Source of the DNA: Macrostomum lignano | Lineage: Eukaryota | Direction of reading: 5' to 3' | DNA: 64,000 nucleotides | NCBI GenBank assembly: GCA_002269645.1 | Contig: NIVC01002543.1 | Coordinates: 62,001 to 126,000, forward strand | Shown here: piece after piece, positions 14,848-62,650 of the stretch | Position numbering within the stretch: the stretch's first letter is position 1 | Layout: each line of letters starts with the position of its first letter | The notes under the pieces: generated by a model | The model's input: the letters and a program-made list of their open reading frames with translations, nothing else | What the model was told of the DNA's origin: nothing | The model's database searches: none | Position numbers and translations under genes: made by a program

Positions 14848-16185
14848 TCCTCTCCTCTCCTCTCCTCTCCTCTCCTCTCCTCTCCTCTCTCCTCTCCTCT
14901 CTCCTCTCCTCTCCTCTCCTCGCCTCTCCTCTCCTCTCCTCTCCTCTCCTCTCCTCTCCTCTCCTCTCCTCTCCTCTCCTCTCCTCTCCTCTCCTCTCCT
15001 TTCCTCACCCCTCTCCTCTCCTCACCTCTCCTCTCCTCTCCTCTCCTCTCCTCTCCTCTCCTCTCCTCTCCTCTCCTCTCCTCTCCTCTCCTCTCCTCTC
15101 TGCTCTGCTCTCCTCTCCTCTCCTCTCCTTTCCTCTCCCCTCTCCTCTCCTCTCCTCTCCTCTCCTCTCCTCTCCTCTCCTCTCCTCTCCTCCCCTCTCC
15201 TCTCCTCTCCTGTCCTCTCCTCCCCTCTCCTCTCCTCTCCTCTCCTCTCCTCTCCTCTCCTCTCCTCTCCTCTCCTCTCCTCTCCTCTCCTCTCCTCTCC
15301 TCGCCTCTCCTCTCCTCTCCTCTCCTCTCCTCTCCTCTCCTCTCCTCTCCTCTCCTCTCCTCTCCTCTCCTTTCCTCTCCCCTCTCCTCTCCTCACCTCT
15401 CCTCTCCTCTCCTCTCCTCTGCTCTCCTCTCCTCTCCTCTCCTCTCCTCTCCTCTCCTCTGCTCTCCTCTCCTCTCCTCTCCTCTCTGCTCTCCTCTCCT
15501 CTCCTCTCCTCTCCTTTCCTCTCCCCTCTCCTCTCCTCTCCTCTCCTCTCCTCTCCTCTCCTCTCCTCTCCTCTCCTTTCCTCTCCCCTCTCCTCTCCTC
15601 TCCTCTCCTCTCCTCTCCTCTCCTCTCCTCTCCTCTCCTTTCCTCACCCCTCTCCTCTCCTCACCTCTCCTCTCCTCTCCTCTCCTCTCCTCTCCTCTCC
15701 TCTCCTCTCCTCTCCTCTCCTCTCCTCTCCTCTCCTCTCCTCTCCTCTCCTCTCTGCTCTCCTCTCCTCTCCTCTCCTCTCCTTTCCTCTCCCTCTCCTC
15801 TCCTCTCCTCTCCTCTCCTCTCCTCTCCTCTCCTCTCCTCTCCTCTCCTCTCCTCTCCTCTCCTCCCCTCTCCTCTCCTCTCCTCTCCTCTCCTCTTCTC
15901 TCCTCTCCTCTCCTCTCCTCTCCTCTCCTCTCCTCTCCTCTGCTCTCCTCTCCTCTCCTCTCCTCTCTGCTCTCCTCTCCTCTCCTCTCCTCTCCTTTCC
16001 TCTCCCTCTCCTCTCCTCTCCTCTCCTCTCCTCTCCTCTCCTCTCCTCTCCTCTCCTCTCCTCTCCTCTCCTCTCCTGTCCTCTCCTCTCCTCTCCTCTC
16101 CTCTCCTCTCCTCTCCTCTCCTCTCTTCTCTGCTCTGCTCTGTTCTCTTCTCTCTCCTCTATTCCCTTTGACCCTCTCCTCTCTC
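14848..16185. repeat. (CTCCT)n pentanucleotide microsatellite, ~1.3 kb polypyrimidine/polypurine tract
   Basis: Direct reading; (SSPLL)n and (EERRG)n ORFs are artefacts. Confidence 0.98.
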
Positions 16186-21840: not shown

Positions 21841-22642
21841 TTACTCCAATTCAATCAAGCCAACTAGAGCACAATGAGCCGAGATTAAACAGCTTTCCAC
21901 ATGTAGAATCGATAGCCGTATGGGGGATAATTGTGCATCAGTATCGTCATCAGTAAGCAATTCTAGCACATGCATGCTTTATTCGGGAGCATGAAATTCG
22001 AGTCTGAAAAACAACCTGATTGACAAGTAGCTAGGCACAGCTGCAGAAAACCGCGCTAGATCGGGTTGCCAAGGCTTGCTGATCAGTGCACCTGATACCC
22101 TCAAACTAGCTGGTCAAAATGCGCACAGCTGGCTGCATGAGTTCGGTTGATGATTATTTATTGTTGACTAAGTAAGACGAACACAGATTGTGTCCTTAAA
22201 GTCCTCCAATCCAGCCCGTGCTGCTACTCTCCCAGTCTATCCATAGTTCCCTAGGGCCTGCTACAAAAGCATTTAGATTGCCCAAAAAATCAAAGCGTTG
22301 GTTTTTGACAAACTGCTGGTATTCCTCGCCTTTACTAAACTCACTCTGTGGCTCTACTCAGCAGAATACCCCGGGGAAATTTGCACAGCAAATCAGCTCA
22401 ACTGTGCTCAAACTGCATCAAGTTAGCTTTCTGCTGAATCGCACTCAACCAAATGATGAGCAGGCGATTCTGTAGAGACAAAATTTGAAACAGTAAGGAA
22501 TAAGTAAAAAGGCAGAAAAATTTTATTTTAAATAACTTGATTTTATAATTGTTACATCGAAAAGAAATAACAAGACAGCAACAGAACGACAACAATAAGC
22601 CGAGAGCCAAAGTTATGAGTGCCATTGTCCAATGCGTTCGGA

Positions 22643-24269
22643 TCAGCTGCTGACACCGCCTGCGGACGAGGCGGCGGAACCGGACGAAGCAGCGGAACCG
22701 GATGTAGAGGCGGAATCGGATGTAGAGGCGGAACCGGATGTAGAGGCGGAACCGGATGAAGCAGCGGAACCGGAAGTAGAGGCGGAACCGGATGTAGAGG
22801 CGGAACCGGATGTAGAGGCGGAACCGGATGTAGAGGCGGAACCGGATGTAGAGGCGGAACCGGATGAAGCAGCGGAACCGGAAGTAGAGGCGGAACTGGA
22901 TGTAGAGGCGGAACCGGACGAGGCTGCGGAACCAGATGAAGCGACGGAACCGGATGAAGCAGCGGAACCGGAGTTAGAGGCGGAACCGGATGTAGAGGCG
23001 GAACCAGATGAAGCAGCGGAACCGGATGTAGAGGCGGAGGCAGACGACGCGGCAGACGCGGTGCTGAGAAAGCCGAGCCGTTTAAGCGAGATTTCAACGT
23101 AAGCCGCGCGGTCAGCCCGGCTCCAGTCCACCATTCGGTCGGGCTGCGTGGCCAGCAGGACCGACCAGCCTCTCCTGGCGTCGGCCACAGCCGGGCACCG
23201 GTTATCAAGGTTGAAGTACAGAACACCGGAAGCGTTGCTGGACTCGCACGGAAGGGCGTCGCCGATGGCGTAGGCAAACGGAGACTCGGCGGCGAACACG
23301 CGAGCGGCCGCGAGAAGCTGACGGCTCCAGCTGGACTGGACAACGCTGTCGCGATCAAAGCTGCCGTTGTAGACCAGCTGCCAGGCCTGGCCGGAGGCGG
23401 TGGTCAGCCGCACCTTGACTAGCGGGAAAGCCAGCGGCCGGGAGCGGAGCAGCTGCGACTTGTAGAACAGGCCGGGCCGGAGGGCGCCTGCGGGGGCGGC
23501 GCTGGCCGGGTAGGTCAGCATGCTGTTGATAAGCAGCTCGGCCAGCGTCACCGGCATGTCAGCGGAGGCGATGAGACCGGGCAGCCAGCCGTCGGAGTCG
23601 GTGGGCAGGGACTTGGCCAGCAGTTGCAGCGATTCCAGGTCCTCCATCTCGGCCAGGGCGGAGGGCCGGCCGGAGCGGGCGAACCGGAAGCGCGGATACG
23701 GGCCCGGCAGGTCCTCGCAGCCGTCCCGGTCGGTGAGCACCGCCAGGAGGCCTTTGCGGCTGGCGCATCGGGAACCAGCGGCCGCGGTAGCAGTTGAAGT
23801 CGAGGCCGAGGCTGCAGTCGATGACGAGGCGGCCGAGCGAGTCAGGATGGAGAACAGGAGGCTGGGGAAACGGTCACTGCGAAGGCTCCAGCTGAGTTCC
23901 AGCGTCTCCTTCACGGACTCGAGTCGCCAGGGGAAGCTGGCCACCAAGTTGGCGGAGCTGAAGAAGCTGGCAAAGTCGGCGGCGGCGGTCTGGAAGGTGA
24001 GGTAGGCGCGGGTTTCGCCTTCCGAGTTGCGGAAGAGCAGCTTCACCTGGCTGTAGGTGCCGACTGTGAAGTTCCTCAGCGCGACAAACTGCCGCATCTC
24101 GGCAGACTCGGCCAAAGACATCCAGGAGTACGCGGTGCCGCGCAGCAGCGAGTCAAAGACCTCCTGAACGCGGACGCCGGAGCCAGCGCTGATCGTCAGC
24201 AGTGGCGAGAAATTGTCCAAGTTGGCGAGCTCCTGGCAGCTGGCGAGGGCTTTCTGGGTGCTGACGAAG
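22643..24269 (-). CDS. Secreted protein exon 6: two tandem globular domains and (SGSAST)n tail
   Basis: Acceptor CATCGCAG|C in phase 2; 1627-nt open frame to TGA at 22645-22643. Confidence 0.85.
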
Positions 24270-27200
24270 CTGCGATGAGGTGCGCCAGGGGGTTGAGAGG
24301 AGTTGAACGCAATGATCTTAACTAGACTGCCTATGCGGGACCAGCTGACACCTCACAGCCTTTAAGCAGCTTAAACAGCCAATCCAGGCCAACACACAGA
24401 CAATCCAGGCCAACACACAGCCAATCCAGCCCAACACACAGACAATCCAGGCCAACACACAGCCAATCCAGGCCAACACAAAGCCAATACAGGCCAACAC
24501 ACAGCCAATTCAGGCCAACACACAGCTAATCCAGGCCAACACACAGACAATCCAGGCCAACACACAGCCAATCCAGGCCAACACACAGCCAATCCAGGCC
24601 AACACACAGCCAATCCAGGCCAACACACAGCCAATCCAGGCCAACACACAGCCAATCCAGGCACAAGAGCTGGAAACCAGTCCGAACGCACCTGGCCACC
24701 TCAGAGCTGTTGGTGCCAGCCTTCATGGACTCAATCTGGGTCTTCAACGAGGAAATTCTCGCTGCCATGTCGCTGTTGAGCAGCAGCACATCCTGGATGC
24801 GGGCTTCCTTCTCCTGCACCATCGCCTCGGAGTTGCTGGCGGCCATGCGCTTCAGCAGCAGCTCCTGGGTGAGCGTCTGCAGCGACTGCCAGGCCGCGGA
24901 AATCTGCGCCTCCAGCGTGGCAATCTTGGAGTCCTCGGCGACCACCTTCGCCTCCTGGTCGCGTCGCAGGGCTTCCAAACGGTCCTCAGCCGAGCCAATT
25001 CGCACCAGAGTCTCCCGGAGCAGCGACACCAGCTGGCTCTTCTTCACTGTGAGGCTCTGCACCCGCTGCTCGAGCTGGCGCACCTGGACCAGGCTGGTCT
25101 CGTAGTCCTCCGCGCTGAACGCCTGGCTGCGCATGGAGTGCAGTCTGTCCAGCTGGTCCTGCAGCCGCTGCACCGTGGCCTTGTAGTGCGACACCATGCG
25201 GCTGCACAGCTCCAGCCTGGAGTTCACCGGCAAACATCCGGGTGGGATTTCAACTGAGTGGGATTCCATTGAGTGGGATTTCACTGTTCAGGATCTAGTT
25301 TTAGTACCGGGTTGTACTGTCTCCCCAAACTAAAATGTTTTTGCAAAGCCAAACAAGAGGCCACAGGCAAGTAAAGTTCTTGGATGAGAGAGCTAGCACT
25401 TCATTCCGCATCATTGAGCAGGTTCCGAAATTTCTGCACTTTACGAGAGGACTGAAAATGTGGAAAATCCCTGATTGTAAAGTTTTGGCTCTCGAAGGAA
25501 AGCATTGAAAATCTTGACATAATGGGTTTATTAGTGGATAAGCTCTGGTTTCGAGTCAAATTCAGATTAGTTGTTAGGTCAGCCAAGGTCATCAACAAGT
25601 CAGTAGGTCAACTGGGGGTCATCAACAAGTCAGTAAATCAACTGAGGGTCATCAACAAGTCAGTAGGTCAACTGGGGTCATCAACAAGTCAGTAGGTCAA
25701 CTGGGGGTCATCAACAAGTCAGTAGGTCAACTGGGGTCATCAACAAGTCAGTAGGTCAACTGGGGTCATCAACAAGTCAGTAGGTCAACTGGGGTCATCA
25801 ACAAGTCAGTAGGTCAACTGGGGTCATCAACAAGTCAGTAGGTCAACTGGGGTCATCAACAAGTCAGAAGGTCAACTGGGGTCATCAACAAGTCAGTAGG
25901 TCAACTGGGGTCATCAACAAGTCAGTAGGTCAACTGGGGTCATCAACAAGTCAGTTAGGTCAACTGGGGGGTCATCAACAAGCCAGCAGATCAGCCTCAC
26001 CGAATCTGCTTGCTCTCGAACTGGTACTGCAGAGTCTCCAGGCTCTCCTGCAGCTGGCTGATGCTGGCGTACACGCTGTAAAGCCAGGCCTCGTACTGGT
26101 GCACCGAGTCCTGCAGGTAGCGCAGAAAGCCCTGCCGGACAGCCAGGCTGCTCCTGGCCGAGTTGCACTCCCGGTAGCACTGCGGGAACAGCAGCTGGAC
26201 GCCTCTGGTGGACAGCAGATAGTAGGAGCTCAGCTCAGCCAGGTTGCCTGGCGTGGAGACAAAGCCGACGGCCTCGGAGTGCAGCGCCGGGTTCCACGTG
26301 GAGCTGAGACTCAAGAAGTAGGCGTTGGTGCCGGTGGGCAGCAGCGAGGCCGCCTCCTTCAGGCTCCGACCGCTGTTTGTGACGCTGTCGGTGATGACCA
26401 CAACGTTGCGGCGGGCATCAGGGCGGCTGACCTGATGCAGCATAGAGGCTGCAGCCGCCACCGCCTCGCCTGTGGCCGTGGCCGAGTCCTCGTCGTAGCG
26501 CAGCAGCAGCAGCCGGCGGAAGAAAACGTCCACAGTCGGACACTCGTCCGGGTTGATGACGCTGAGGACGCGGCCGCTGTAGAAGACGGCGCCGAACTGG
26601 ACAGCTGCGGGCCCGTAGCTAAGCTGGCTGGCCAGGCGGGCCATGAAGGAGGCAACCTGGGAGACGGTGCGATTAGGCGTTGTTCAGTGAGGGTTCGGTG
26701 AGGGACGGCGAGGGATTGGCGAGAAATGACATGAGGGTTCGGCGAGAAATGGCAAGAGGGTTCGGCGAGAAATGACACGAGGGTTCGGCGAGAAATGGCA
26801 AGAGGGCTCGGTGAGAAATGGCAAGAGGGTTCGGCGAGAAATGGCAAGAGGGTTCGGCGAGAAATGGCAAGAGGGTTCGGCGAGAAATGGCAAGAGGGTT
26901 CGGCGAGAAATGGCAAGAGGGTTCGGCGAGAAATGGCAAGAGAGTTCGGCGAGAAATGGCAAGAGAGTTCGGCGAGAAATGGCAAGAGAGTTCGGCGAGA
27001 AATGGCAAGAGAGTTCGGCGAGAAATAGCAAGAGGGTTCGGTGAGAACTGGCACGAGGGTTCGGCAGGAGTCGGCGAGTGTGGGGGTCGAATCTCGCGCA
27101 GATAGACGGAGACCGGTTTCTGGCTTGTTTGCCTTCGTCAGTTAGCAATAGACATACACCGTCCCCTCCCACCAGTATCAGTTTATACAGACATTTCTTA

Positions 27201-30200
27201 TATGGCGGCATCTTGCAGGTTATACAAGAAATTCTACGATTCAAATCTTTATAATTTATCTACTTTTCTTAGTAGTCTATATTGAATCTCTCACGGCGGG
27301 GGTTTGGCACGAGTCAACAAGGGTTAGACAAGAGTCGGTGAGGGTTAGGCGAGAGTCAGTAGAGATTCGGCGAGAGTCGATAGAGATTCGGCGAGAGTCG
27401 ATAGAGATTCGGCGAGAGTCGATAGAGATTCGGCGAGAGTCGGTAGAGATTCGGTGAGAGTCGGTAGAGATTCGGTGAGAGTCGGTAGAGATTCGGCGAG
27501 AGTCGGTAGAGATTCGGCGAGAGTCGGTAGAGATTCGGTGAGAGTCGGTAGAGATTCGGTGAGAGTCAGTAGAGATTCGGTGAGAGTCGGTAGAGATTCG
27601 GCGAGAGTCGGTAGAGATTCGGTGAGAGTCGGTAGAGATTCGGTGAGAGCCGGTAGAGATTCGGTGAGAGTCGGTAGAGATTCGGTGAGAGTCAGTAGAG
27701 ATTAGGCGAGAGTCAGTAGAGATTAGGCGAGAGTCAGTAGAGATTCTTCGAGAGCCGGTGAGGATTAGGGAATGTCGGTAGGGAAATCAAAGCATCAGGT
27801 TCACCTGAAATCTGATCTGAAAAGGCGACTTGGCTCGGTTGGTGTCCACAACAAAGACAATGTAGTTCTGGCCGGGAAAGCAGGCGGCAGCGGTGCCGGT
27901 CCAGTTCTGCTGCCGGCAGGCGTACTGGCAGCCCTCCGTCAGCTGCGGCAGCTCGCCGCGACGGCAGGTGGCCACCGGGGCTGGGCAGAGGCGGTAGCGA
28001 CGGAGGCGGCAGCCACCATCCAGTTGGAGCCACTCGGAGCTGAACTCGACAGGAGACTGGCGCCACGGCTGCACAGGACAGCCCTTTGCGTCCAGCGGAA
28101 TGCGAGTGGATGAACTGGTGGAGCCTGAAGACGAGGTCGAACCAGAAACAGATCCGACAGTTGAAGCAGAGCCGGCAGTTGAAGCAGATCCAGCAGTTGA
28201 AGCAGATCCAGCAGTTGAAGCCGAGCCGGCAGTTGAAGCAGATCCAGCAGTTGAAGCAGATCCAGCAGTTGAAGCAGATCCAGCAGTTGAAGCAGATCCA
28301 GCAGTTGAAGCAGATCCAGCAGTTGAAGCAGATCCAGCAGTTGAAGCAGATCCAGCAGTTGAAGCAGATCCAGCAGTTGAAGCAGAGCCGGCAGTTGAAG
28401 CAGATCCAGCAGTTGAAGCAGATCCAGCAGTTGAAGCAGATCCAGCAGTTGAAGCAGATCCAGCAGTTGAAGCAGATCCAGCAGTTGAAGCAGATCCAGC
28501 AGTTGAAGCAGATCCAGCAGTTGAAGCAGATCCAGCAGTTGAAGCAGAGCCGGCAGTTGAAGCAGATCCAGCAGTTGAAGCAGATCCAGCAGTTGAAGCA
28601 GAGCCGGCAGTTGAAGCAGAGCCGGCAGTTGGAGCAGAGCCAGCAGTTGAAGCAGAGCCGGCAGATGAGGCAGAGCCAGCAGTTGAAGCAGAGCCGGCAG
28701 ATGAGGCAGAGCCAGCAGTTGAAGCAGAGCCGGCAGATGAAGCAGAGCCAGCAGTTGAAGCAGAGCCGGCAGATGAAGCAGAGCCGGCAGATGAAGCAGA
28801 GCCGGCAGTTGAGCCAGAACCAGTAAGACGGCCAGAACCAGCAGTTGAGCCAGAACCAGTAAGACGGCCAGAACCAGCAGTTGAGCCAGAACCAGTAAGA
28901 CGGCCAGAACCAGCAGTTGAGCCAGAACCAGTAAGACGGCCAGAACCAGCAGTTGAGCCAGAACCAGTAAGACGGCCAGAACCAGCAGTTGAGCCGGAAC
29001 CAGCAGGCAAGGAGCCGGCAGCAGTATTAGCAGAGGTTTTAGTGGACGAAAACGAGCTTGAAGACGCAGATGCAGCGGAAGAAGCCGATGAGGAGGATGT
29101 GGAAATGTGGTGGCTCGATTCCATGGCCAGTGCAATCTGTTTGCAGTCAAATTGCTGGCACTGGAGCCACTTGGTTGGCCGGGGCGTCTCGCGGTAGCCG
29201 GCCGGACAGGCTGGACGCTCGGCCGGACAGTCGACGCAGGTGAGGCTGGGGCAGCCGTGAGCGTCAATCACCTGAGTTTAAGTGGGTTGGATGGTGGAGA
29301 GCTTTAGGCGTGGCGGGGGTCTTTTAATAGCGAAGCATTGCTGATTCCAGATTTCCGAGGGAGACACAGGTAGACAGGGAACAGAGAGAGACACAGGTAG
29401 ACAGGGAACAGAGAGAGACACAGGTAGACAGGGAACAGAGAGACACAGGTAGACAGGGAACAGAGAGAGACACAGGTAGACAGGGAACAGAGAGAGACAC
29501 AGGTAGACAGGGAACAGAGAGAGACACAGGTAGACAGGGAACAGAGAGAGACACAGGTAGACAGGGAACAGAGAGACACAGGTAGACAGGGAACAGAGAG
29601 AGACACAGGTAGACAGGGAACAGAGAGAGACACAGGTAGACAGGGAACAGAGAGAGAGACAGACACAGGTAGACAGGGAACAGAGAGAGAGACAGACACA
29701 GGTAGACAGGGAACAGAGAGAGAGACAGACACAGGTAGACAGGGAACAGAGAGAGACACAGGTAGACAGGGAACAGAGAGAGACAGACACAGGTAGACAG
29801 GGAACAGAGAGAGAGACACATGTAGACAGGGAACAGAGAGAGACACAGGTAGACAGGGAACAGAGAGAGACACAGGTAGACAGGGAACAGAGAGAGACAC
29901 AGGTAGACAGGGAACAGAGAGAGACACAGGTAGACAGGGAACAGAGAGAGACACAGGTAGACAGGGAACAGAGAGAGAGAGACAGACACAGGTAGACAGG
30001 GAACAGAGAGAGAGAGAGACAGACACAGGTAGACAGGGAACAGAGAGACACAGGTAGACAGGGAACACAGAGAGACACATGTAGATAGGGAACAGAGAGA
30101 CACAGCAGAGCGGCTCACCTGTTGCACCTGCTGTGAGCCGGCGGTGCAATTCGGCAGGGCGGTCCCGGAGGCAACGCAGGCGGCCGGCAGATCGCGACAG

Positions 30201-32331
30201 CCGGGCGGGCGGCTGCCAGCAGACGGGCAGGGCAGGCAGAACTGAGCGGAGCAGCCGTCAATGCGGAGGCTGGCCAGGTGGAACAGGCCAGGCTGACAGT
30301 CTGCGGCCTCGAAGTCCAGCTGGCCGCGGCGGCTGCAGCCGGGCCTGGCGGCGCAGGCCTCCTGGTCGCGGCAGGGCCGGCAGGTCGCCGTCTTGCAGCC
30401 GTTGGCGTCCAAGCTGAACTCGGCGGTGGTGCCGGGGCTGCACAGCACCAGCGGCTCCGGGCAGGGGCGGCGGCACTCGGCGGGCAGCTGAGCCTCTGAC
30501 GAATTCAGGCGGGCTGCTGAGCGAAGATTTGCATTCTATTGGCTTTTTGTGCGATAACAGTTGCCAATTCACCCTAGAAAGTGCACCTGGCTCTTGCACC
30601 ACGACTCTTGGGAATGTGAATCAGTCCCTGTGAATCAGTCCCTGTGAATCAGTCCCTGTGAATCAGTCCCTGTGAATCAGTCCCTGTGAATCAGTCCCTG
30701 TGAATCAGTCCCTGTGAATCAGGCCCTGTGAATCAGGCCCTGTGAATCAGTCCCTGTGAATCAGTCCCTGTGAATCAGTCCCTGTGAATCAGTCCCTGTG
30801 AATCAGTCCCTGTGAATCAGTCCCTGTGAATCAGTCCCTGTGAATCAGTCCCTGTGAATCAGTCCCTGTGAATCAGTCCCTGTGAATCAGTCCCTGTGAA
30901 TCAGTCCCTGTGAATCAGTCCCTGTGAATCAGTCCCTGTGAATCAGTCCCTGTGAATCAGTCCCTGTGAATCAGTCCCTGTGAATCAGTCCCTGTGAATC
31001 AGTCCCTGTGAATCAGTCCCTGTGAATCAGTCCCTGTGAATCAGTCCCTGTGAATCAGTCCCTGTGAATCAGTCCCTGTGAATCAGTCCCTGTGAATCAG
31101 TCCCTGTGAATCAGTCCCTGTGAATCAGTCCCTGTGAATCAGTCCCTGTGAATCAGTCCCTGTGAATCAGTCCCTGTGAATCAGTCCCTGTGAATCAGTC
31201 CCTGTGAATCAGTCCCTGTGAATCAGTCCCTGTGAACGCACCCGCCATCTCGCAGCTGGCGCACTCCACCTGAAGGCAGCCCCCTTCAGCAGCGGGCGCA
31301 GCTCGGCGGTACTGCCCGGCGGAGCAGGCCACCGCCCAGTCCGGCTGGCTGCCGCAGTCTTCACTCGGTCGGCAGGCCGGCAGGTCGCGGTGTTTGAAGT
31401 CGCAGTCGCGGCAGCTCCACGGCTGGCAGTGTCCGATCGGATTGTCCGCCCTAAACTGACCGGCCGGACAGGACACCGGCAGGGTGTTGTTCGGACAGGG
31501 CTCGCAGATCCAGTGGCAGGTGGCGAGGCCACTGCTGGAGTCCCGCAGCAGCTGCTTGGCGGGCTGGCGGCCAGGCGGGCAGTCGGGCTTGTTTGCCTCT
31601 GTGCAGCCCGGCGCTGGGCAGCCAGGCCGGTCGGCGGTGTCCGGTGTGCAGTCGGCGCACCCGGCCAGCGGACAGCCGGTCTCTGGGTCAGATTCGGTTC
31701 GGACATACTGGCCGGGAGGGCAGACTGGCTCGGACAGTAGCGGACAGGCGGCACAGGAGGACAGCTGGCAGCCGAGAGAGTCGTTGAATCGACGGAGGAA
31801 CTGGCCGGAGCCGCAGGCGGGGGGCTTCGCAGCCTGCGGCGGGCAGCGGCAGCCGTAGCGGAGGCCCATGAGAGCCGGGGCGCAGGGCAGGCAGGCGAGC
31901 GACGAACAGCCGGCATCCTCGGCCTCGCCCAAGAACTGGCCAGCCGGACATTGGCCGGTAAAGTCAGCCGGCGGAGCTATTGGTGGGCAGTCGAGGCCGC
32001 GGCATTCGGACCGGTGGCTGGAGGTCAGGCCGCACGGCTGGCAGGCGTCAGCGGGGCATCCGGCCGGGTCGAAGCTGACCTTGTGAAAGTTGCCGGGCGG
32101 GCAGTTGATGGAGCGGATGGTGGGGCAGCGAATCTCCGGGGGCAGAGGCTGGGAGTCGGCGATGATGGGGAAGCTGGGACTCGGAGGCGGCAGTGTGGTC
32201 GGGGCTTGGCCGGCATGAACTGTGGATGCCGGGAGCAGCTGGGCAGCTGCTGGTTGGGCCAGCTGGCACAGGGCCAGACAGCTAAGCAGAAGGGTGGCAA
32301 CGGCTGGGAGCCGCCGCAGTCTGTGCAACAT
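22643..32331 (-). CDS. Large secreted multidomain protein, ~1913 aa, 6 exons (signal peptide; Cys-rich repeats; mucin-like linker; VWA; coiled coil; two unnamed globular domains; S/T/A/G tail)
   Basis: Exons 32331-31242, 30495-30119, 29271-27805, 26656-26001, 25216-24692, 24269-22643. All introns are GT-AG with phases 1,0,0,2,2; total 5742 nt, open frame. A Cys repeat and the VWA beta-A strand continue across junctions. Confidence 0.88.
24376..24661. repeat. 21-bp intronic minisatellite (CAACACACAGCCAATCCAGGC)n
   Basis: Direct periodicity within intron 5 (24270-24691). Confidence 0.95.
24692..25216 (-). CDS. Secreted protein exon 5: coiled coil
   Basis: Acceptor CTCCAG|G, donor AG|GTGCGT; heptad pattern ([22 protein letters not shown]). 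Confidence 0.88.
25587..25980. repeat. 30-31-bp intronic minisatellite (GGTCATCAACAAGTCAGTAGGTCAACTGGG)n
   Basis: Direct periodicity within intron 4 (25217-26000). Confidence 0.95.
26001..26656 (-). CDS. Secreted protein exon 4: von Willebrand factor A domain and start of coiled coil
   Basis: Acceptor CCTAAT...CTCCCAG|GTT, donor CG|GTGAGG; VQFGAVFYS...TATGEA...[13 protein letters not shown] matches the VWA pattern. Confidence 0.9.
26690..27065. repeat. 23-bp intronic minisatellite (GAGGGTTCGGCGAGAAATGGCAA)n
   Basis: Direct periodicity within intron 3 (26657-27804). Confidence 0.95.
27340..27745. repeat. 21-bp intronic minisatellite (TCGGYGAGAGTCGGTAGAGAT)n
   Basis: Direct periodicity within intron 3; shares TTCGGCGAGA with the neighbouring 23-mer. 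Confidence 0.93.
27805..29271 (-). CDS. Secreted protein exon 3: last Cys repeats, ([12 protein letters not shown])5 and (GSASTA)n linker, sushi-like motif, start of VWA
   Basis: Acceptor AAACTCAG|GTG, donor CAG|GTGAAC; 1467 nt in frame; ends [21 protein letters not shown]. Confidence 0.85.
29360..30102. repeat. ~25-35-bp intronic minisatellite GACACAGGTAGACAGGGAACA(GA)n with variable GA tract
   Basis: Direct periodicity within intron 2 (29272-30118). Confidence 0.95.
30119..30495 (-). CDS. Secreted protein exon 2: Cys-rich repeats
   Basis: Acceptor CTGAATTCGTCAG|AG, donor CAG|GTGAGC; [24 protein letters not shown]. Confidence 0.9.
30615..31236. repeat. 14-bp intronic minisatellite (TGTGAATCAGTCCC)n, ~44 nearly perfect copies
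   Basis: Direct periodicity within intron 1 (30496-31241), starting ~5 nt inside the donor. Confidence 0.97.
31242..32331 (-). CDS. Secreted protein exon 1: signal peptide and Cys-rich repeats
   Basis: [30 protein letters not shown]|Q signal peptide; CxxG..GC-x4-CxxC repeats; donor G|GTGCGT. Confidence 0.9.
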
Positions 32332-35353: not shown

Positions 35354-36115
35354 TCAGAGAGCTTTAAGCGACACGTAGCTCTGCAGCTGGTTGGGCAGCG
35401 GCAGCTTATTAACCTTGTGCTTCATAGAGTCAGTGTGCCCCAGAGCCCGTTGGATCTCGTTGCGGCACAGCCGTTTCAAAGAGCGCACGTTGCACTCCTC
35501 CCTGTGCAGCCAGTCGGAGAAGTCCTGATCAGCGTAGATGATCTTGTCCGGTATGATCTGGTTCTCCAACAGCCAGCGGGTGAAGGCCTGCAGGTTGAGC
35601 GGGTCGCAGCCGTGCGACAGCAGCAGCTTGACCATGGGGATGTCCAGCTTGGGGAACTTCACGGCCATGTGCAACGGAGCCAAGCCGTCCTTGTCGCAGC
35701 GGTTCACCTGGGCGCCGTGCTTAATGAGCTTGTCGGCGATGGCCAGGTGGCCGTGCAGCACGGCGATGTACAGAGGAGTTTTGCCGTTGCGGTCGGCGGC
35801 GTTCACGTCGGAGCCGTGGCGCAGCAGCAGGTCGACAATGTCGGTGCGGCCGTGATAGGTGGCCACGTACAGCGGGGTCTTCTTGTGCGTGTCCGGCTGG
35901 TCAACGTCAGCCTCGGAGCGGAGCAGAGCCTGCACAATCTCCAGGTGGCCAAAGTAGGCAGCGATGTACATTGGCGATTTCAGCTCCTTGTTGGGCAGGT
36001 GAACATCGGCGCCCTTGGAGAGGAAATAATTGACAAGCTCGACATGGCCGCGGCTGGTTGCCAGGTACAGCGGCGACCGGCCGTACGAGTCCGTGCTATT
36101 GATTGACGCGTTGCC
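35354..36115 (-). CDS. ASB-like exon 3 (ankyrin repeats and SOCS box)
   Basis: Acceptor CCTGTAG|GGC; GRSPLYLA, KKTPLYVA, GKTPLYIA; SOCS box then stop. Confidence 0.93.
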   Translation of the reverse strand, partial: GNASINSTDSYGRSPLYLATSRGHVELVNYFLSKGADVHLPNKELKSPMYIAAYFGHLEIVQALLRSEADVDQPDTHKKTPLYVATYHGRTDIVDLLLRHGSDVNAADRNGKTPLYIAVLHGHLAIADKLIKHGAQVNRCDKDGLAPLHMAVKFPKLDIPMVKLLLSHGCDPLNLQAFTRWLLENQIIPDKIIYADQDFSDWLHREECNVRSLKRLCRNEIQRALGHTDSMKHKVNKLPLPNQLQSYVSLKAL

Positions 36116-39100
36116 CTACAGGTAGGCGGCAGGTAAGTATGCTCAAACTTTCATTAGGATTCCCTTAAAGACGAAGCGGCAATGCGCCTGGCCCAAGGAC
36201 TACTTAAGTAAAGGGAATGGAAACTACGGTTCTTGGAACATTATCAGGCAGGCTTTATCAAAAAAATACTATATGGAGATTGGATTTCATTTGATCAGCA
36301 CAAAAAATTGTCATTGCTTTTGATAGGAAGTAGACCCAATGTTTATTTCGTATGTCTTGTCTTTGTTAAAGCTCTATTGATATTCACAAAGCTTTTCGTT
36401 TAGAAAATTAGGATTCTATGTTAGTTTTATTAACTTTATTAACGGCTGACTTTGACATAGGTAACCCGTTGAAAACGCTAGAGAGTGATAGCAAACAACC
36501 CACTAGTCACTCGAACGACTCTTAATGTGGCTTTTTAACGACTCAAAAACGACTGTAATGCGACGGAGAGGTGACTGTTGAGTCACAAACGCATCACGCG
36601 AGAATCGTAAGAGTCGCGGAAAAAGTCATTCAAGAGTCTTTGTGTTAGCGCGTAACTTTCGAAATGACTCTATACATTTCGCAGACAATAAAACGCCCCA
36701 AATTGATTTTTTGGCGACTTGTTCTGGGACATCTTGGTCGTTTTAGAGTCGTCTAGAGTCATTTCTTTGCTACGTCGTATTCTACATGCGTTAACTCTGA
36801 AACGATTCTGGGGCGACGCAAGCGACTCTGGGACGCTTCTTGGCCTGGGTACCGTTTTCATCGGGTAATGGTTAGCACTGGCCATCTATAGGTTGCGAAT
36901 AGGGAGTGTCTATAAATAAACAAATCAATTCCTTGGCTGGCACAGAGGGAGTCAAATTTTACCGCTAGGTAGCTAATAGCTACAAAGCCAGGCTCCACTG
37001 GATCGATGCAGTCAAACTGGCGCACCTCATAAGGCTGGAAAATCAATGTAATCCAATCTATAATACTTCTCTCTCACCTGTCCTAATAGGAGCTGAGTCA
37101 TTGACAGGCAGCCAGTGTAGGCAGCGTGGTGCAGAGCAGTCATGCCCTGCTTGTCAGTCTTGCTGGCTGAGCTGCCGGCGGCCAGAAGCAGGGCTGCCAG
37201 GCCCACTCCGCTGGCGCCCAGCTCGGCGGCAATCATGAGCGGCGTCATGCCGATCTGGTCGGTGTCCTCCAGCCGCAACGACTCCGACTTCAGCAGGGCG
37301 CCAACTACCGCCTCGCGTCGGTCCTTCACCGCTGAGGTGAGCGCCGTGTCGCCGCTCTCGCTTTTCAGGTTGACATTGACGCTGGGGAACTGAACCATCT
37401 CGGCGGCGATCTGGGCGCTGGCCCGGTGCAGCGGGGCCAGGCCGTCGGTGTCCAGCAGGTTGGGATTGCAGTCGTTTTGCAGCAGGGCTCGGCAGGTGGC
37501 GCGGTACTTCTCAGAGGTCTGCGTGGCTATGAGGTGCAGCCCCGTTTGCAAGTGCTGGTTGCGCATGTTCACGTCCGCGTTGGACTTCACCTGGACGGAT
37601 GGGGGTTGGGTGCTCAATAATCCTGTTGGTGGGGACTAAAGATCTGGGAGGGTGGGGACTCGATCTGGGATCTGAGAGGGGGTGGAGACAATCTAGGGAT
37701 CTGGGAGGGACTCGATCTAGGGATCTAGGAGGGTGGGGATTCGATGTAGGGATCTAAGAGGGTTGGATACTTAATCTAGGGATCTGGGAGGGTTGGGGAC
37801 TCAATCTAGGGATCTGGGAAGGTGGGGATTCGATGTAGGGACCTAAGAGGGTAGGAGACTAATATAAAGATCTGGGAGGGTTGGGGACTCAATCTAGGGA
37901 TTTGGGAGGGTTGTAGACTCAATCTAGGGATTTGGGAGGGTTGGGGACTCAATCTAAGGATCCGGGAGGTTTGGAGACTTAATCTAGGGATCTGGGAGGG
38001 TGAGGATTCAATGTAGGGACCTAAGAGGGTAGGAGACTAATATAAAGATCTGGGAGGGTTGGGGACTCATTCTAAGGATTTGGGAGGGTTGTAGACTCAA
38101 TCTAGGGATCTGGGACGGTGGGGACTCAATCTAAGGATCTGGGAGGGTTGGGGACTCAATCTAGGGATCTTGGAAGGTGGGGATTCGATGTAGGGACCTA
38201 AGAGGGTAGGAGACTAATATAAAGATCTGGGAGGGTTGGGGACTCAATCTAGGGATTTGGGAGGGTTGTAGACTCAATCTAGGGATCTGGGAGGGTGGGG
38301 ATTCAATGTAGGGACCTAAGAGGGTAGGATACTTAATATAAAGATCTGGGAGGGTTGGGGACTCAATCTAGGGATTTGGGAGGGTTGGGGACTCAATCTA
38401 AGGATCCGGGAGGTTTGGAGACTTAATCTAGGGATCTGGGAGGGTTGAGGACTCAATCTAGGGATCTGGGAGGTTTGGGGACTCAATCTAGGGATCTGGG
38501 AAGGTGGGGATTCGATGTAGGGATCTAGGAGGGTTGGAGACTTAATCCAGGGATCTGGGAGGGTGAGGATTCAATGTAGGGACCTAAGAGGGTAGGAGAC
38601 TAATATAAAGATCTGGGAGGGTTGGGGACTCAATCTAGGGATTTGGGAGGGTTGTAGACTCAATCTAGGGATCTGGGAGGGTTGGGGACTCAATCTAAGG
38701 ATCCGGGAGGTTTGGAGACTTAATCTAGGGATCTGGGAGGGTGAGGATTCAATGTAGGGACCTAAGAGGGTAGGAGACTAATATAAAGATCTGGGAGGGT
38801 TGGGGACTCATTCTAAGGATTTGGGAGGGTTGTAGACTCAATCTAGGGATCTGGGACGGTGGGGACTCAATCTAAGGATCTGGGAGGGTTGGGGACTCAA
38901 TCTAGGGATCTGGGAAGGTGGGGATTCGATGTAGGGACCTAAGAGGGTAGGAGACTAATATAAAGATCTGGGAGGGTTGGGGACTCAATCTAGGGATTTG
39001 GGAGGGTTGGGGACTCAATCTAGGGATCTGGGACAGTGGGGACTCATTCCAAGGATCTGGGAGGGTTGAGGACTCAATCTAGGGATCTGGGAGGGTTGGG

Positions 39101-42100
39101 GACTCAATCTAGGGATCTGGGAAGGTGGGGATTCGATGTAGGGATCTAGGAGGGTTGGAGACTTAATCCAGAGATCTGGGAGGGTGGGGATTCAATGTAG
39201 GGATCTAAGAGGGTTGGATACTTAATCTAGGGATCTGGGAGGGTTGGGGACTCAATCTAAGGATCCGGGAGGTTTGGAGACTTAATCTAGGGATCTGGGA
39301 CGGTGGGGACTCAATCCAAGGATCTGGGAGGGTTGAGGACTCAATCTAGGGATCCGGGAGGGTTGAGGACTCAATCTAGGGATCTGGGAGGGTTGGGGAC
39401 TCAATCTAGGGATCTGGGAGGGTTGGGGACTCAATCTAGGGATCCGGGAGGGTTGAGGACTCAATCTAGGGATCTGGGAGGGTTGAGGACTCAATCTAGG
39501 GATCCGGGAGGGTTGAGGACTCAATCTAGGGATTTGGGAGGGTTGAGGACTCAATCTAGGGATCCGGGAGGGTTGGGGACTCAATCTAGGGATCTGGGAG
39601 GGTTGAGGACTCAATCTAGGGATCCTGGAGGGTTGGGGACTCAATCTAGGGATCTGGGAGGGTTGAGGACTCAATCTAGGGATCTGGGAGGGTTGAGGAC
39701 TCAATCTAGGGATCTGGGACGGTGGGGACTCAATCTAAGGATCTGGGAGGGCTGGGGACTCAATCTAGGGATCTGGGAGGGTTGAGGACTCAATCTAGGG
39801 ATTTGGGAGGGTTGAGGACTCAATCTAGGGATCCGGGAGGGTTGAGGACTCAATCTAGGGATCCGGGAGGGTTGGGGACTCAATCTAGGGATCTGGGAGG
39901 GTTGAGGACTCAATCTAGGGATCTGGGACGGTGGGGACTCAATCTAAGGATCTGGGAGGGCTGGGGACTCAATCTAGGGATCTGGGAGGGTTGAGGACTC
40001 AATCTAGGGATCTGGGAGGGTTGAGGACTCAATCTAGGGATCCGGGAGGGTTGAGGACTCAATCTAGGGATCCGGGAGGGTTGAGGACTCAATCTAGGGA
40101 TCTGGGAGGGTTGAGGACTCAATCTAGGGATCCGGGAGGGTTGAGGACTCAATCTAGGGATCTGGGAGGGTTGGGGACTCAATCTAGGGATCTGGGAGGG
40201 TTGGGGACTCAATCTAGGGATCCGGGAGGGTTGAGGACTCAATCTAGGGATCTGGGAGGGTTGAGGACTCAATCTAGGGATCCGGGAGGGTTGAGGACTC
40301 AATCTAGGGATTTGGGAGGGTTGAGGACTCAATCTAGGGATCCGGGAGGGTTGGGGACTCAATCTAGGGATCTGGGAGGGTTGAGGACTCAATCTAGGGA
40401 TCCTGGAGGGTTGGGGACTCAATCTAGGGATCTGGGAGGGTTGAGGACTCAATCTAGGGATCTGGGAGGGTTGAGGACTCAATCTAGGGATCTGGGACGG
40501 TGGGGACTCAATCTAAGGATCTGGGAGGGCTGGGGACTCAATCTAGGGATCTGGGAGGGTTGAGGACTCAATCTAGGGATTTGGGAGGGTTGAGGACTCA
40601 ATCTAGGGATCCGGGAGGGTTGGGGACTCAATCTAGGGATCCGGGAGGGTTGGGGACTCAATCTAGGGATCTGGGAGGGTTGAGGACTCAATCTAGGGAT
40701 CTGGGACGGTGGGGACTCAATCTAAGGATCTGGGAGGGCTGGGGACTCAATCTAGGGATCTGGGAGGGTTGAGGACTCAATCTAGGGATCTGGGAGGGTT
40801 GAGGACTCAATCTAGGGATCCGGGAGGGTTGAGGACTCAATCTAGGGATCCGGGAGGGTTGAGGACTCAATCTAGGGATCTGGGAGGGTTGAGGACTCAA
40901 TCTAGGGATCCGGGAGGGTTGAGGACTCAATCTAGGGATCTGGGAGGGTTGGGGACTCAATCTAGGGATCTGGGAGGGTTGGGGACTCAATCTAGGGATC
41001 CGGGAGGGTTGAGGACTCAATCTAGGGATCTGGGAGGGTTGAGGACTCAATCTAGGGATCCGGGAGGGTTGAGGACTCAATCTAGGGATTTGGGAGGGTT
41101 GAGGACTCAATCTAGGGATCCGGGAGGGTTGGGGACTCAATCTAGGGATCTGGGAGGGTTGAGGACTCAATCTAGGGATCCTGGAGGGTTGGGGACTCAA
41201 TCTAGGGATCTGGGAGGGTTGAGGACTCAATCTAGGGATCTGGGAGGGTTGAGGACTCAATCTAGGGATCTGGGACGGTGGGGACTCAATCTAAGGATCT
41301 GGGAGGGCTGGGGACTCAATCTAGGGATCTGGGAGGGTTGAGGACTCAATCTAAGGATTTGGGAGGGTTGAGGACTCAATCTAGGGATCCGGGAGGGTTG
41401 GGGACTCAATCTAGGGATCCGGGAGGGTTGGGGACTCAATCTAGGGATCTGGGAGGGTTGAGGACTCAATCTAGGGATCTGGGACGGTGGGGACTCAATC
41501 TAAGGATCTGGGAGGGCTGGGGACTCAATCTAGGGATCTGGGAGGGTTGAGGACTCAATCTAGGGATCTGGGAGGGTTGAGGACTCAATCTAGGGATCCG
41601 GGAGGGTTGAGGACTCAATCTAGGGATCCGGGAGGGTTGAGGACTCAATCTAGGGATCTGGGAGGGTTGAGGACTCAATCTAGGGATCCGGGAGGGTTGA
41701 GGACTCAATCTAGGGATCCGGGAGGGTTGAGGACTCAATCTAGGGATCCGGGAGGGTTGAGGACTCAATCTAGGGATCTGGGAGGGTTGAGGACTCAATC
41801 TAGGGATCCGGGAGGGTTGAGGACTCAATCTAGGGATCCGGGAGGGTTGAGGATTCGATGTAGGGAGGGTAGAAAAATTGAGAGCCTGGAAGGTTAACCA
41901 GAGAAGAAGTGCAGTATCGAACATGCTTCTGTGGCTGGCATAGTTAATCTAACAAACAACTGACCAGCAGTTCGATAATTTCAGTCCGTCCATAAGTTGC
42001 AGCCTGCAGCAGCGGGTAGGTTGGCGCATCGTACACGTGTATGTTGGCGCCAGCCTTCAACAACAGCTTGACCATCTGCACGTGGCCGAGTTCGACGGCC

Positions 42101-55775: not shown

Positions 55776-56340
55776 ACTGAGCAGAGTCTGGGCACCAAAT
55801 ACTATGTCCATCTTAAGAGAGGCCGGGAAAGTGCAGACGGAATTGGCAGCCGTCACGGATAAAGCAGTGACGCGCGCATGGTTTCAAGCTGAATCAAAAT
55901 ATTAATTTGTCTAATGACCGGGGCAGACTGAGGATTGGCAAAGGAAGAGTGCGCCGCAGAGTCCTGAGGCACTAGCAGCTCAGCATCATCAGCGCAGTGC
56001 TGTGGGATGGCTGGCGGCCTAGTCTAGCGAGAAATCCGTGAAATTAGCCGTCATCCAACGGACAGGCTGAGAGAAAGGAAAATAATTAATCTGAGTTTCT
56101 AAAGAACCTGGCTCAGAAAGTGCTAGTATACGAGAGCGGAGTTTATCTAGCTAAAAAGAGTCCAACCGACCAGGAACTGCTAGAATACTATTGAGCACGG
56201 GAAGCGCAAAGTTTATGAGGCTGATCATTTGGAGCGCATGACTACCTGGTCATGGTCAGGCAGTTTACACACTGTAATATGGTCTTGAGTGTGTACACGG
56301 AATTAAACCTAAAATCAATGATTCGAGTGAAAATCTTTCG

Positions 56341-62650
<6,310 letters not shown>

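What the first reader, a model, noticed from the sequence alone, without database searches (positions are those of the whole stretch)
22643..32331. Unusual ~1900-aa secreted protein: candidate mucus, adhesive or ECM component
Seen: signal peptide; ~11 repeats of C-x-x-G-x(8-18)-C-x4-C-x-x-C (antistasin-like spacing); ~260 aa of G/S/T/A repeats; a sushi-like motif; a VWA domain whose MIDAS is degenerate (DTNRA for DxSxS); a ~200-aa coiled coil; two globular domains; a second S/T/A/G tail. Inference: an oligomeric stalk-and-head secreted glycoprotein. I do not recognise this domain combination. It differs from the vWD/C8/TIL-type flatworm adhesion proteins as I recall them.
Basis: partly seen in the sequence, partly recalled or inferred. 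Interest (0 to 1): 0.7.

Follow-up and report, generated by a model that had tools for sequence, protein, structure and literature searches.

The report
Orphan secreted VWA coiled-coil flatworm protein
This is a real six-exon gene of the flatworm Macrostomum lignano for a large secreted protein: a new kind of cysteine-rich repeat, serine-rich spacers, one recognisable VWA domain, a long coiled coil and a C-terminal part with no relative found; its role is unknown and it is only moderately unusual.

Summary
A six-exon, all GT-AG model on the minus strand (32331 to 22643) gives one 1,913-codon reading frame. It encodes a signal peptide and 10 full plus 1 partial Cys repeats (0.36 expected by chance). 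These are followed by a 331-aa S/T/A/G region, a 7-Cys module and a VWA domain (Pfam E 4.7e-13) with DTNRA in place of DxSxS. Then come a Pro-free coiled coil of about 226 aa, about 400 aa of non-repetitive C-terminal sequence and a 138-aa Ser-rich tail. The organism is Macrostomum lignano. The only database relative is UniProt A0A1I8JL82, a truncated and mis-modelled automatic prediction of the same gene.

The labels "antistasin-like" and "sushi-like" have no profile support. The C-terminal 403 aa has no detectable homologue in 1.84 billion representative proteins.

One caveat is new. The central S/T/A/G array has GC3 of 0.20 against 0.84 for the rest of the gene, and it resembles the tandem arrays that fill all five introns, so it might be spliced out. 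Several sequence arguments favour translation (about 75%).

Best reading: a lineage-restricted, disulfide-rich, coiled-coil-oligomerised extracellular scaffold or adhesive glycoprotein. Tissue and function are untested. Interest is moderate.

The parts
22643..32331 (-). Whole coding region: 6 exons, 1,913 codons plus TGA stop at 22643-22645
   Evidence: all junctions are GT-AG and the result is a single open frame. Non-repeat parts of every exon share GC3 of 0.75-0.89, against intron GC of 0.46-0.55.
32242..32331 (-). Signal peptide (residues 1-30)
   Evidence: It holds the most hydrophobic 19-mer of the protein (KD 1.73), with a basic n-region and an AAA|Q site. No predictor was run; this is a heuristic reading.
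29134..32127 (-). Cys-rich repeat region, residues 69-535 (58 Cys): 10 full and 1 partial unit of C-x2-G-x10-16-C-x4-C-x2-C. Long units carry two extra N-terminal Cys. It spans exons 1-3, so the coordinates include introns 1 and 2.
   Evidence: 10 observed against 0.36 expected. An AF2 model of one unit built on the 11-unit alignment has pLDDT 70 and shows a beta-hairpin. No Pfam or PDB relative was found.
28111..29103 (-). S/T/A/G low-complexity region, residues 546-876. Its core is the [12 protein letters not shown] (36-nt) and GSASTA (18-nt) tandem arrays at 28145-29003.
   Evidence: S+T is 50%. GC3 is 0.20 against 0.84 for the rest of the CDS. Translation is likely but not proven.
27880..28080 (-).
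   Evidence: Read from the sequence. No Pfam Sushi hit at E<=5.
26165..27882 (-). VWA domain, residues ~953-1142 (Pfam match 960-1097), split by intron 3. The MIDAS position reads D965-T-N-R-A969 (27832-27846). Cys953 and Cys1138 lie at its two ends.
   Evidence: PF00092, 50.2 bits against a cut-off of 23.8, profile positions 2-141. Searches give the exon-only score and the sequence.
24260..26143 (-). Coiled-coil region, residues ~1150-1375, spanning exons 4-6. Cys1142 and Cys1383 flank it; Cys1201 sits at a heptad core position.
   Evidence: There are 0 Pro and 3 Gly in 226 aa. One unbroken heptad register runs from 1156 to 1222 across the exon 4/5 junction at residue 1197.
23060..24259 (-). 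Orphan C-terminal region: segment a (1376-1516), S/T/A linker (1517-1538) and segment b (1539-1775)
   Evidence: No relatives were found in 1.84e9 representative proteins, the 5.8e9-protein word search, PDB sequences, Pfam or metagenome contigs. GC3 of 0.84 matches the other exons.
22646..23059 (-). Ser-rich C-terminal tail, residues 1776-1913: 18-nt array encoding (T/A)SGSAS, 59% S+T, pI 4.05
22522..22527 (-). AATAAA polyadenylation signal about 115 nt after the stop codon, in an AT-rich stretch
30496..31241 (-). Intron 1, 83% filled by a 14-nt tandem array. Introns 2-5 (29272-30118, 26657-27804, 25217-26000, 24270-24691) are likewise 52-88% tandem array.

Best explanation
A single six-exon gene of Macrostomum lignano encodes a soluble secreted protein of about 191 kDa before modification.

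Shown:
- the reading frame and its splice sites;
- the signal-peptide-like N-terminus;
- the repeated Cys framework;
- the VWA domain lacking both MIDAS serines;
- the heptad region.

Inferred mechanism:
- The ~225-residue coiled coil brings two or more chains together in parallel. Cys1142 and Cys1383 at its two ends, and Cys1201 in the core, could lock the oligomer with interchain disulfides, as Cys residues next to the coiled coils do in matrilins and COMP.
- The eleven disulfide-rich beta-hairpin modules form stiff N-terminal arms.
- The S/T/A/G arrays, if translated, form extended and probably O-glycosylated or phosphorylated spacers.
- The MIDAS-less VWA and the orphan C-terminal region are the binding heads. 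VWA binding would then be metal-independent, as in VWF A1 and A3.

Overall this is a multivalent extracellular cross-linker or scaffold (mucus, glue, egg-shell or matrix component) restricted to the Macrostomum lineage. The tissue and the ligands are unknown.
For: - Gene model and codon bias. The model has clean GT-AG junctions. Non-repeat segments of all six exons share the same strong codon bias, GC3 0.75-0.89.
- Exon 3/4 junction. Splicing raises the VWA score from E 3.3e-9 to 4.7e-13 and restores profile positions 2-24.
- Exon 4/5 junction. It keeps a single heptad register from 1156 to 1222.
- Independent support for exons 1-4. The automatic model A0A1I8JL82 joins them in the same order.
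- Gene ends. The first ATG is preceded by an in-frame stop and followed by a signal-peptide-like segment. AATAAA lies about 115 nt past the stop.
- Cys repeats. They occur far above chance and are old, with only the Cys/Gly framework conserved. The modelled unit is a beta-hairpin.
- Secretion. There is no TM segment, and there are nine N-x-S/T sequons.
- Translation of the S/T/A/G arrays:
  - the eleventh Cys repeat and high GC3 continue past the only in-frame alternative donor;
  - both flanks and the exon-6 linker encode the same S/T/A composition with varied codons, including AGC and AGT;
  - the two array consensus units differ at 7 nt, 6 of them at codon position 3, with an in-frame rotation.
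Against: - No transcript or protein evidence is available here.
- The only independent model (A0A1I8JL82) splices out the central array and stops at the end of exon 4.
- The central array has GC3 of 0.20, opposite to the gene's bias. It looks like the arrays that fill every intron.
- All three frames are open through it, so its open frame proves nothing.
- No homologues exist outside this species in the databases searched, so conservation cannot be used as evidence.
- Oligomer state, glycosylation, disulfide pattern and function are all inferred from architecture.
Confidence: 0.55

Rival explanations
1. Same gene, but the central S/T/A/G tandem array is an intron or a facultative 'exitron' (GT at 29170, AG at 28115, in frame). 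The mature protein would then be about 1,560 aa, with the Cys-rich region joined almost directly to the 7-Cys module and the VWA, and with no mucin-like spacer.
For: The A0A1I8JL82 model uses exactly this junction (RPT-N-SSTRIPL). GC3 in the array is 0.20 against 0.84 elsewhere. All five accepted introns are 52-88% tandem array of similar size and unit length. The third-position bias of variants within the array is matched by an intronic 21-mer control, so it is not evidence for coding.
Against: - The donor GTGGCT lacks the +5 G that four of the five accepted donors carry.
- Splicing there would cut off [10 protein letters not shown]. That stretch completes the eleventh repeat with the normal G-to-C spacing and has exon-like GC3.
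- The flanks encode S/T/A with mixed codons.
- The relation between the central and tail array units is synonymous-like.
- A0A1I8JL82 is demonstrably unreliable: it has a frame-shifted stretch and internal gaps.
Confidence: 0.22
2. Two genes are merged in the model. Exons 1-4 would encode a secreted Cys-rich VWA protein ending at the read-through stop in the exon-4 donor, as in A0A1I8JL82. Exons 5-6 would belong to a separate coiled-coil protein.
For: A0A1I8JL82 ends at ...ESKQI, which is the end of exon 4. The C-terminal 403 aa matches no predicted protein in the databases, including the M. lignano entries that supplied A0A1I8JL82.
Against: - The heptad register is continuous across the junction.
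- No signal-peptide-like segment occurs anywhere downstream of the N-terminus, so a separate exon 5-6 product would have none. Exon 6 has no in-frame Met before residue 1423.
- Codon bias is the same throughout.
- The only AATAAA seen downstream lies after exon 6.
Confidence: 0.1
3. The N-terminal repeats are divergent antistasin-type (or other small disulfide-rich) protease-inhibitor domains. The protein would then act mainly as a multi-headed secreted protease inhibitor rather than as a scaffold.
For: The Cys/Gly spacing C-x2-G-...-D-x-x-G-C-x4-C-x2-C recalls the second half of antistasin-like domains. The modelled unit is a small beta-hairpin.
Against: No Pfam match was found for the region or for any single unit at E<=10. 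The repeat profile hit no antistasin, hirustasin or bdellastasin chain in PDB sequences at E<=10. Foldseek found nothing with E<=0.001. The loop lengths differ from the family's spacing as recalled.
Confidence: 0.08
4. The locus is a decaying or non-expressed duplicate in this polyploid, repeat-rich genome.
For: No matching transcript-derived protein was found in the databases.
Against: A 5.7-kb frame is intact across six exons, splice sites are preserved and codon bias is strong and uniform. The Cys framework is intact in all units.
Confidence: 0.05

Closest known systems
UniProt A0A1I8JL82 (Macrostomum lignano 'VWFA domain-containing protein', 840 aa, unreviewed automatic prediction)
   Same: It is the same gene, or a near-identical allele or paralogue. 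Residues are identical or nearly so over the signal peptide, the Cys repeats, the 7-Cys module, the VWA and the start of the coiled coil.
   Different: It has a frame-shifted stretch in exon 1, a different intron-1 acceptor, and 15-aa and 3-aa gaps in the VWA. The central array is spliced out. The model stops at exon 4, so about 715 aa (the rest of the coiled coil, the C-terminal region and the tail) are missing.
Matrilins and COMP/thrombospondin-type oligomeric matrix proteins
   Same: These are secreted proteins with small disulfide-rich repeats, VWA domains (in matrilins), and a coiled coil that oligomerises the chains and is flanked by Cys. The working logic is a multivalent matrix adaptor (established knowledge of these families).
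   Different: No EGF domains were detected. There is one VWA and it lacks both MIDAS serines. The coiled coil is internal and about five times longer. There are also an extra orphan C-terminal region and Ser-rich arrays. No sequence similarity exists beyond the VWA profile.
VWF A1/A3-type VWA domains without a functional MIDAS
   Same: The fold is VWA, the metal-site serines are replaced, and a Cys sits at each end of the domain (Cys953 and Cys1138). This suggests metal-independent ligand binding (an inference from known VWF A-domain biology).
   Different: phmmer found no PDB chain at E<=0.01. The similarity is at family-profile level only.
[quoted passage not shown]
   Same: They come from the same species and are large, secreted, Cys-rich, repetitive and glycosylated candidates for surface or cohesion functions.
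   Different: Mlig-ap1 and Mlig-ap2 are built from vWD, C8, TIL, EGF, C-type lectin, LDL-receptor and TSP-1 domains plus Lys/Arg-rich regions. None of these is detected here. This protein instead has a VWA (type A, not type D) and a coiled coil.
Antistasin-like domain (Pfam PF02822)
   Same: It is a six-Cys small module with a Gly after the third Cys and a D-x-x-G-C turn before the fourth (spacing resemblance, from memory).
   Different: Loops are longer, and the spacing is C-x4-C-x2-C where I recall C-x3-C-x-C for antistasin. No profile or structure match was found.

Membership tests
VWA domain (Pfam PF00092) | Profile match above the curated gathering score | tested here: met
   50.2 bits against a cut-off of 23.8, E 4.7e-13, profile positions 2-141 of 174, residues 960-1097 of the spliced protein.
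VWA domain with a functional MIDAS (integrin I-domain type) | DxSxS motif after strand beta-1 | tested here: not met
   The sequence at that position is D965-T-N967-R-A969. Both serines are replaced. The later Thr (ATATGE) and Asp (ITDS) appear to be retained, judged by eye only.
Matrilin family | EGF-like domains between or after the VWA domains | tested here: not met
   No EGF-family Pfam hit anywhere in the protein at E<=5.
Matrilin family | C-terminal oligomerising coiled coil | tested here: inconclusive
   A heptad region of ~226 aa follows the VWA, but it is internal and much longer. The oligomer state was not testable.
Antistasin-like domain (PF02822) | Profile match or similarity to solved antistasin-type inhibitors | tested here: not met
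   No Pfam hit for the 545-aa N-terminus at E<=5 or for any of the 11 units at E<=10. The repeat profile against PDB sequences gave no antistasin-type chain at E<=10. Foldseek gave no match with E<=0.001.
Sushi/CCP domain (PF00084) | Profile match; four Cys plus a conserved Trp | tested here: not met
   No Sushi hit at E<=5. The stretch 887-953 has 7 Cys. A Trp lies 7 residues before the last Cys, but nothing more links it to the family.
Gel-forming mucin / VWF-like adhesives (Mlig-ap1, Mlig-ap2, Sfp1) | vWD-C8-TIL assemblies | tested here: not met
   None of these Pfam families was hit. The architecture of Mlig-ap1 and Mlig-ap2 is taken from PMC6410801.
Mucin-like (S/T-rich tandem repeat) domain | Translated tandem repeats rich in Ser/Thr that carry dense O-glycans | tested here: inconclusive
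   The composition fits: 50% S+T in 546-876 and 59% in the tail, though almost without Pro. Translation of the central array is likely but unproven. Glycosylation is not testable here.
Ephrin-receptor-like, furin-like or TNFR-type Cys-rich repeats | Profile match | tested here: not met
   No Pfam hit. The R-spondin furin-repeat chains in the Foldseek list have E>7 and probability <=0.06, which is chance level.

The most novel reading that the evidence does not exclude
The protein would define a Macrostomum-specific class of coiled-coil-oligomerised extracellular glue or mucus scaffold. It would be built from two modules with no described family: a ~45-aa six-Cys beta-hairpin repeat and a ~400-aa orphan C-terminal head. 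It would have evolved independently of the vWD/C8/TIL adhesives known from flatworms and echinoderms, with Ser-rich arrays recruited from the genome's abundant tandem repeats as glycosylated or phosphorylated spacers.
Probability: 0.25. Interest if true: 0.55.

Novelty: new variant of a known kind. Interest (0 to 1): 0.35.

Why it matters
M. lignano is the main model for reversible bioadhesion and a widely used flatworm model, and the public annotation of this gene is truncated and mis-spliced. A correct 1,913-aa model gives workers on adhesion, mucus, cement-gland or egg-shell biology a concrete candidate with an architecture unlike the known Mlig-ap proteins. It also supplies two sequence modules that no family database covers.

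The locus illustrates a practical annotation hazard in this genome. In-frame tandem arrays inside exons cannot be told apart from the arrays that fill introns without RNA evidence. It also hints that such arrays may be a source of new low-complexity protein spacers.

Without expression or functional data the finding remains one more lineage-specific secreted protein, so its importance is moderate.

Tried and rejected
- Repeat-profile search of the 5.8e9-protein collection. Only 33 candidates were collected and not even A0A1I8JL82 was recovered. I treat this as uninformative, not as evidence of absence. The N-terminal region therefore never had a proper deep homology search.
- Look-up of contigs encoding A0A1I8JL82: not on record, so no second genomic copy could be compared.
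- Single-sequence AF2 of the C-terminal 403 aa: pLDDT 35, unusable, so no fold search was run on it.
- Foldseek of the one-unit Cys-repeat model against the PDB: nothing with E<=0.001. The R-spondin, VWF C4 and Entamoeba lectin rows are at chance level.
- phmmer of the N-terminal region against PDB sequences: only spurious summed hits to designed armadillo repeats through one short motif ([13 protein letters not shown]).
- phmmer of the VWA against PDB sequences: none at E<=0.01.
- Metagenome scan with the C-terminal region: no relatives.
- Third-codon-position bias of variants within the central array as a test for coding. I rejected it because an intronic 21-mer array shows the same skew (25 of 41 variant cells in one phase).
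- Literature: no paper holds the accession or peptide strings, and none describes a Macrostomum VWA plus coiled-coil secreted protein.
- Similarity between the two C-terminal segments, and paralogues elsewhere in the window: none.
- Rfam and tRNA scans of the window: nothing.


Full report
**What is there**

The interval 22643-32331 on the minus strand holds six long open segments. They join through five canonical introns into one frame of 5,742 nt, or 1,913 aa. The donors are GTGCGT, GTGAGC, GTGAAC, GTGAGG and GTGCGT, and every acceptor ends in CAG. The exons are 32331-31242, 30495-30119, 29271-27805, 26656-26001, 25216-24692 and 24269-22643.

An in-frame stop lies just upstream of the first ATG. 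An AATAAA lies about 115 nt past the TGA, in AT-rich sequence. The non-repetitive parts of all six exons share a strong codon bias, with GC3 of 0.75-0.89, while the introns have 46-55% GC.

**Organism and prior annotation**

A search with residues 876-1775 returned one protein, UniProt A0A1I8JL82. It is labelled 'VWFA domain-containing protein' from Macrostomum lignano. It is a near-identical but defective automatic model of this gene:
- it has a frame-shifted stretch inside exon 1;
- it uses another intron-1 acceptor;
- it has 15-aa and 3-aa gaps in the VWA;
- it splices out the central Ser-rich array;
- it ends at the last codons of exon 4.

The gene is thus not entirely new to databases, but its full architecture is not represented there.

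**Domain by domain**

1. Residues 1-30 look like a signal peptide. No other hydrophobic segment of TM length exists.
2. Residues 69-535 carry 58 Cys.
Shuffles give a mean of 0.36 and a maximum of 3.
   - Units share only 23-39% identity, with the Cys/Gly framework invariant.
   - Seven units carry two further N-terminal Cys, giving six per unit.
   - An AF2 model of one unit, using the eleven units as its alignment, reaches pLDDT 70 (about 80 over the core) and is a beta-hairpin with the D-x-x-G-C turn at its tip.
   - No Pfam family matches the region or any unit even at E<=10. A profile of the units finds no antistasin-type or other Cys-rich chain in the PDB, and Foldseek finds nothing with E<=0.001.
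3. Residues 546-876 are S/T/A/G low complexity built around 36-nt and 18-nt arrays.
4. Residues 887-953 are a 7-Cys module without Sushi profile support.
5. Residues 960-1097 match Pfam VWA at E 4.7e-13 once exons 3 and 4 are joined, against 3.3e-9 for exon 4 alone. The MIDAS position reads DTNRA. Cys953 and Cys1138 bracket the domain.
6. Residues ~1150-1375 have no Pro and 3 Gly, with heptad periodicity. One unbroken register runs from 1156 to 1222 across the exon 4/5 junction.
7. Residues 1376-1775 are non-repetitive, split by a 22-aa S/T/A linker. They have no detectable relative in:
   - 1.84 billion representative proteins read exhaustively by HMMER;
   - the 5.8-billion-protein word search;
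   - PDB sequences;
   - Pfam;
   - metagenome contigs.
   The single-sequence structure prediction failed.
8. Residues 1776-1913 are an acidic Ser-rich tail encoded by an 18-nt array.

**Is the central array translated?**

This is the main new caveat. High-score tandem arrays make up 37% of the window and 52-88% of each of the gene's five introns. The central array has the same size and unit length as those intronic arrays. Its GC3 is 0.20 against 0.84 for the rest of the coding sequence. All three frames are open through it. An in-frame GT (29170) and AG (28115) pair exists and is the junction used by A0A1I8JL82.

Four observations argue against splicing:
- That donor (GTGGCT) lacks the +5 G found in four of the five accepted donors.
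- Splicing would remove [10 protein letters not shown]. This stretch completes the eleventh repeat with the normal spacing and still has exon-like GC3.
- Both flanks of the array, and the short linker inside exon 6, encode the same S/T/A composition with mixed synonymous codons, including AGC and AGT.
- The consensus units of the central and tail arrays (GGATCTGCTTCAACTGCT and GGTTCCGCCTCTACATCC) differ at seven positions. Six are third codon positions in the model's frame, and the best rotation is a multiple of three.

The skew of within-array variants toward third positions is not usable, because an intronic 21-mer shows the same skew. I put translation at roughly 75%. Alternative splicing is possible.

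**One gene or two?**

Several points favour one gene:
- the heptad register is continuous across the exon 4/5 junction;
- codon bias is uniform;
- no signal-peptide-like segment occurs downstream of the N-terminus, so a separate exon 5-6 product would have none;
- the poly(A) signal follows exon 6.

The truncated public model is the only contrary hint, and it is unreliable.

**How it probably works**

This section is inference from architecture. The protein looks like a soluble secreted multivalent scaffold.
- The long coiled coil would assemble parallel oligomers. Cys1142, Cys1201 (a heptad core position) and Cys1383 are placed to lock them covalently, as in matrilins and COMP.
- The eleven disulfide-rich hairpin modules give stiff arms.
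- The Ser-rich arrays give extended spacers, likely O-glycosylated or phosphorylated.
- The MIDAS-less VWA and the orphan C-terminal region would be the binding ends.

This fits a mucus, glue, egg-shell or matrix component. Nothing here identifies the tissue or the ligand. A protease-inhibitor role for the repeats is a minor rival with no profile support.

**Comparison with known systems**

It works like the matrilin/COMP class of oligomeric matrix adaptors but is not a member: it has no EGF domains, the coiled coil is internal, and there is a single MIDAS-less VWA. It is unlike Mlig-ap1 and Mlig-ap2, which are built from vWD, C8, TIL, EGF, lectin, LDL-receptor and TSP-1 domains and Lys/Arg-rich regions (PMC6410801). 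The 'antistasin-like' and 'sushi-like' labels are spacing resemblances that failed every profile test available here. Literature searches found no description of this protein.

**Verdict**

Novelty is 'new variant of a known kind': a lineage-restricted modular secreted VWA and coiled-coil protein with two uncatalogued modules. Interest is moderate (0.35). The architecture is unusual and the C-terminal region is a true orphan in very large databases. However, lineage-specific secreted repeat proteins are common in flatworms, and no function, expression or conservation data are available.

The N-terminal repeat region did not get a proper deep homology search, because one search was uninformative. 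Its 'no family' status therefore rests on Pfam and the PDB only.

Noticed in passing
window 1-64000; gene introns at 30496-31241, 29272-30118, 26657-27804, 25217-26000, 24270-24691: High-score tandem arrays make up 37% of the window, each with its own unit of 5-88 nt. Every intron of the gene is 52-88% array, and the arrays start within a few bases of the splice donor (for example the 14-mer in intron 1).
   Followed up: partly
window 56339-62650, 37641-41866 and 14847-16160: Three very large arrays are present: a 15-mer x421 (6.3 kb), a 30-mer x142 (4.2 kb) and CTCCT x258. They create long spurious ORFs on both strands, for example a 2,126-aa 'ORF' at 56242-62622.
   Followed up: no
window 1-4763: Short arrays of an 88-nt unit recur at regular spacing (about 1.9 kb between like copies). 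This suggests a higher-order repeat or several copies of an element that carries an internal 88-nt array.
   Followed up: no
window 35354-37617, minus strand: The upstream neighbour is an ankyrin-repeat plus SOCS-box (ASB-like) gene. Ank_2 scores E 3.7e-35 and SOCS_box E 9e-10 on two exon-sized ORFs.
   Followed up: partly
window 47641-50165, plus strand: A long Glu/Lys/Gln-rich coiled-coil gene is present. One exon-sized ORF matches Pfam FAM184 (E 3.9e-11).
   Followed up: partly
window 28100-29197 (+) and 22632-23102 (+): Antisense ORFs of 365 and 156 aa (AEPAVEAD... repeats) run through the two Ser-rich arrays. They arise because the arrays contain no stop codons and are not evidence of plus-strand genes.
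   Followed up: partly
window 31242-32331 compared with UniProt A0A1I8JL82: The public protein model carries about 70 residues that correspond to another reading frame of exon 1. It also has five true amino-acid differences (P120S, F133Y, R158H, A412G, E1182Q). It therefore derives from an error-containing assembly of an allele or recent paralogue.
   Followed up: partly
window 11522-13170, minus strand: Two overlapping-frame ORFs of 238 and 344 aa, rich in Gln, Pro and Ser, have no Pfam match. They are probably exons of another lineage-specific gene.
   Followed up: no
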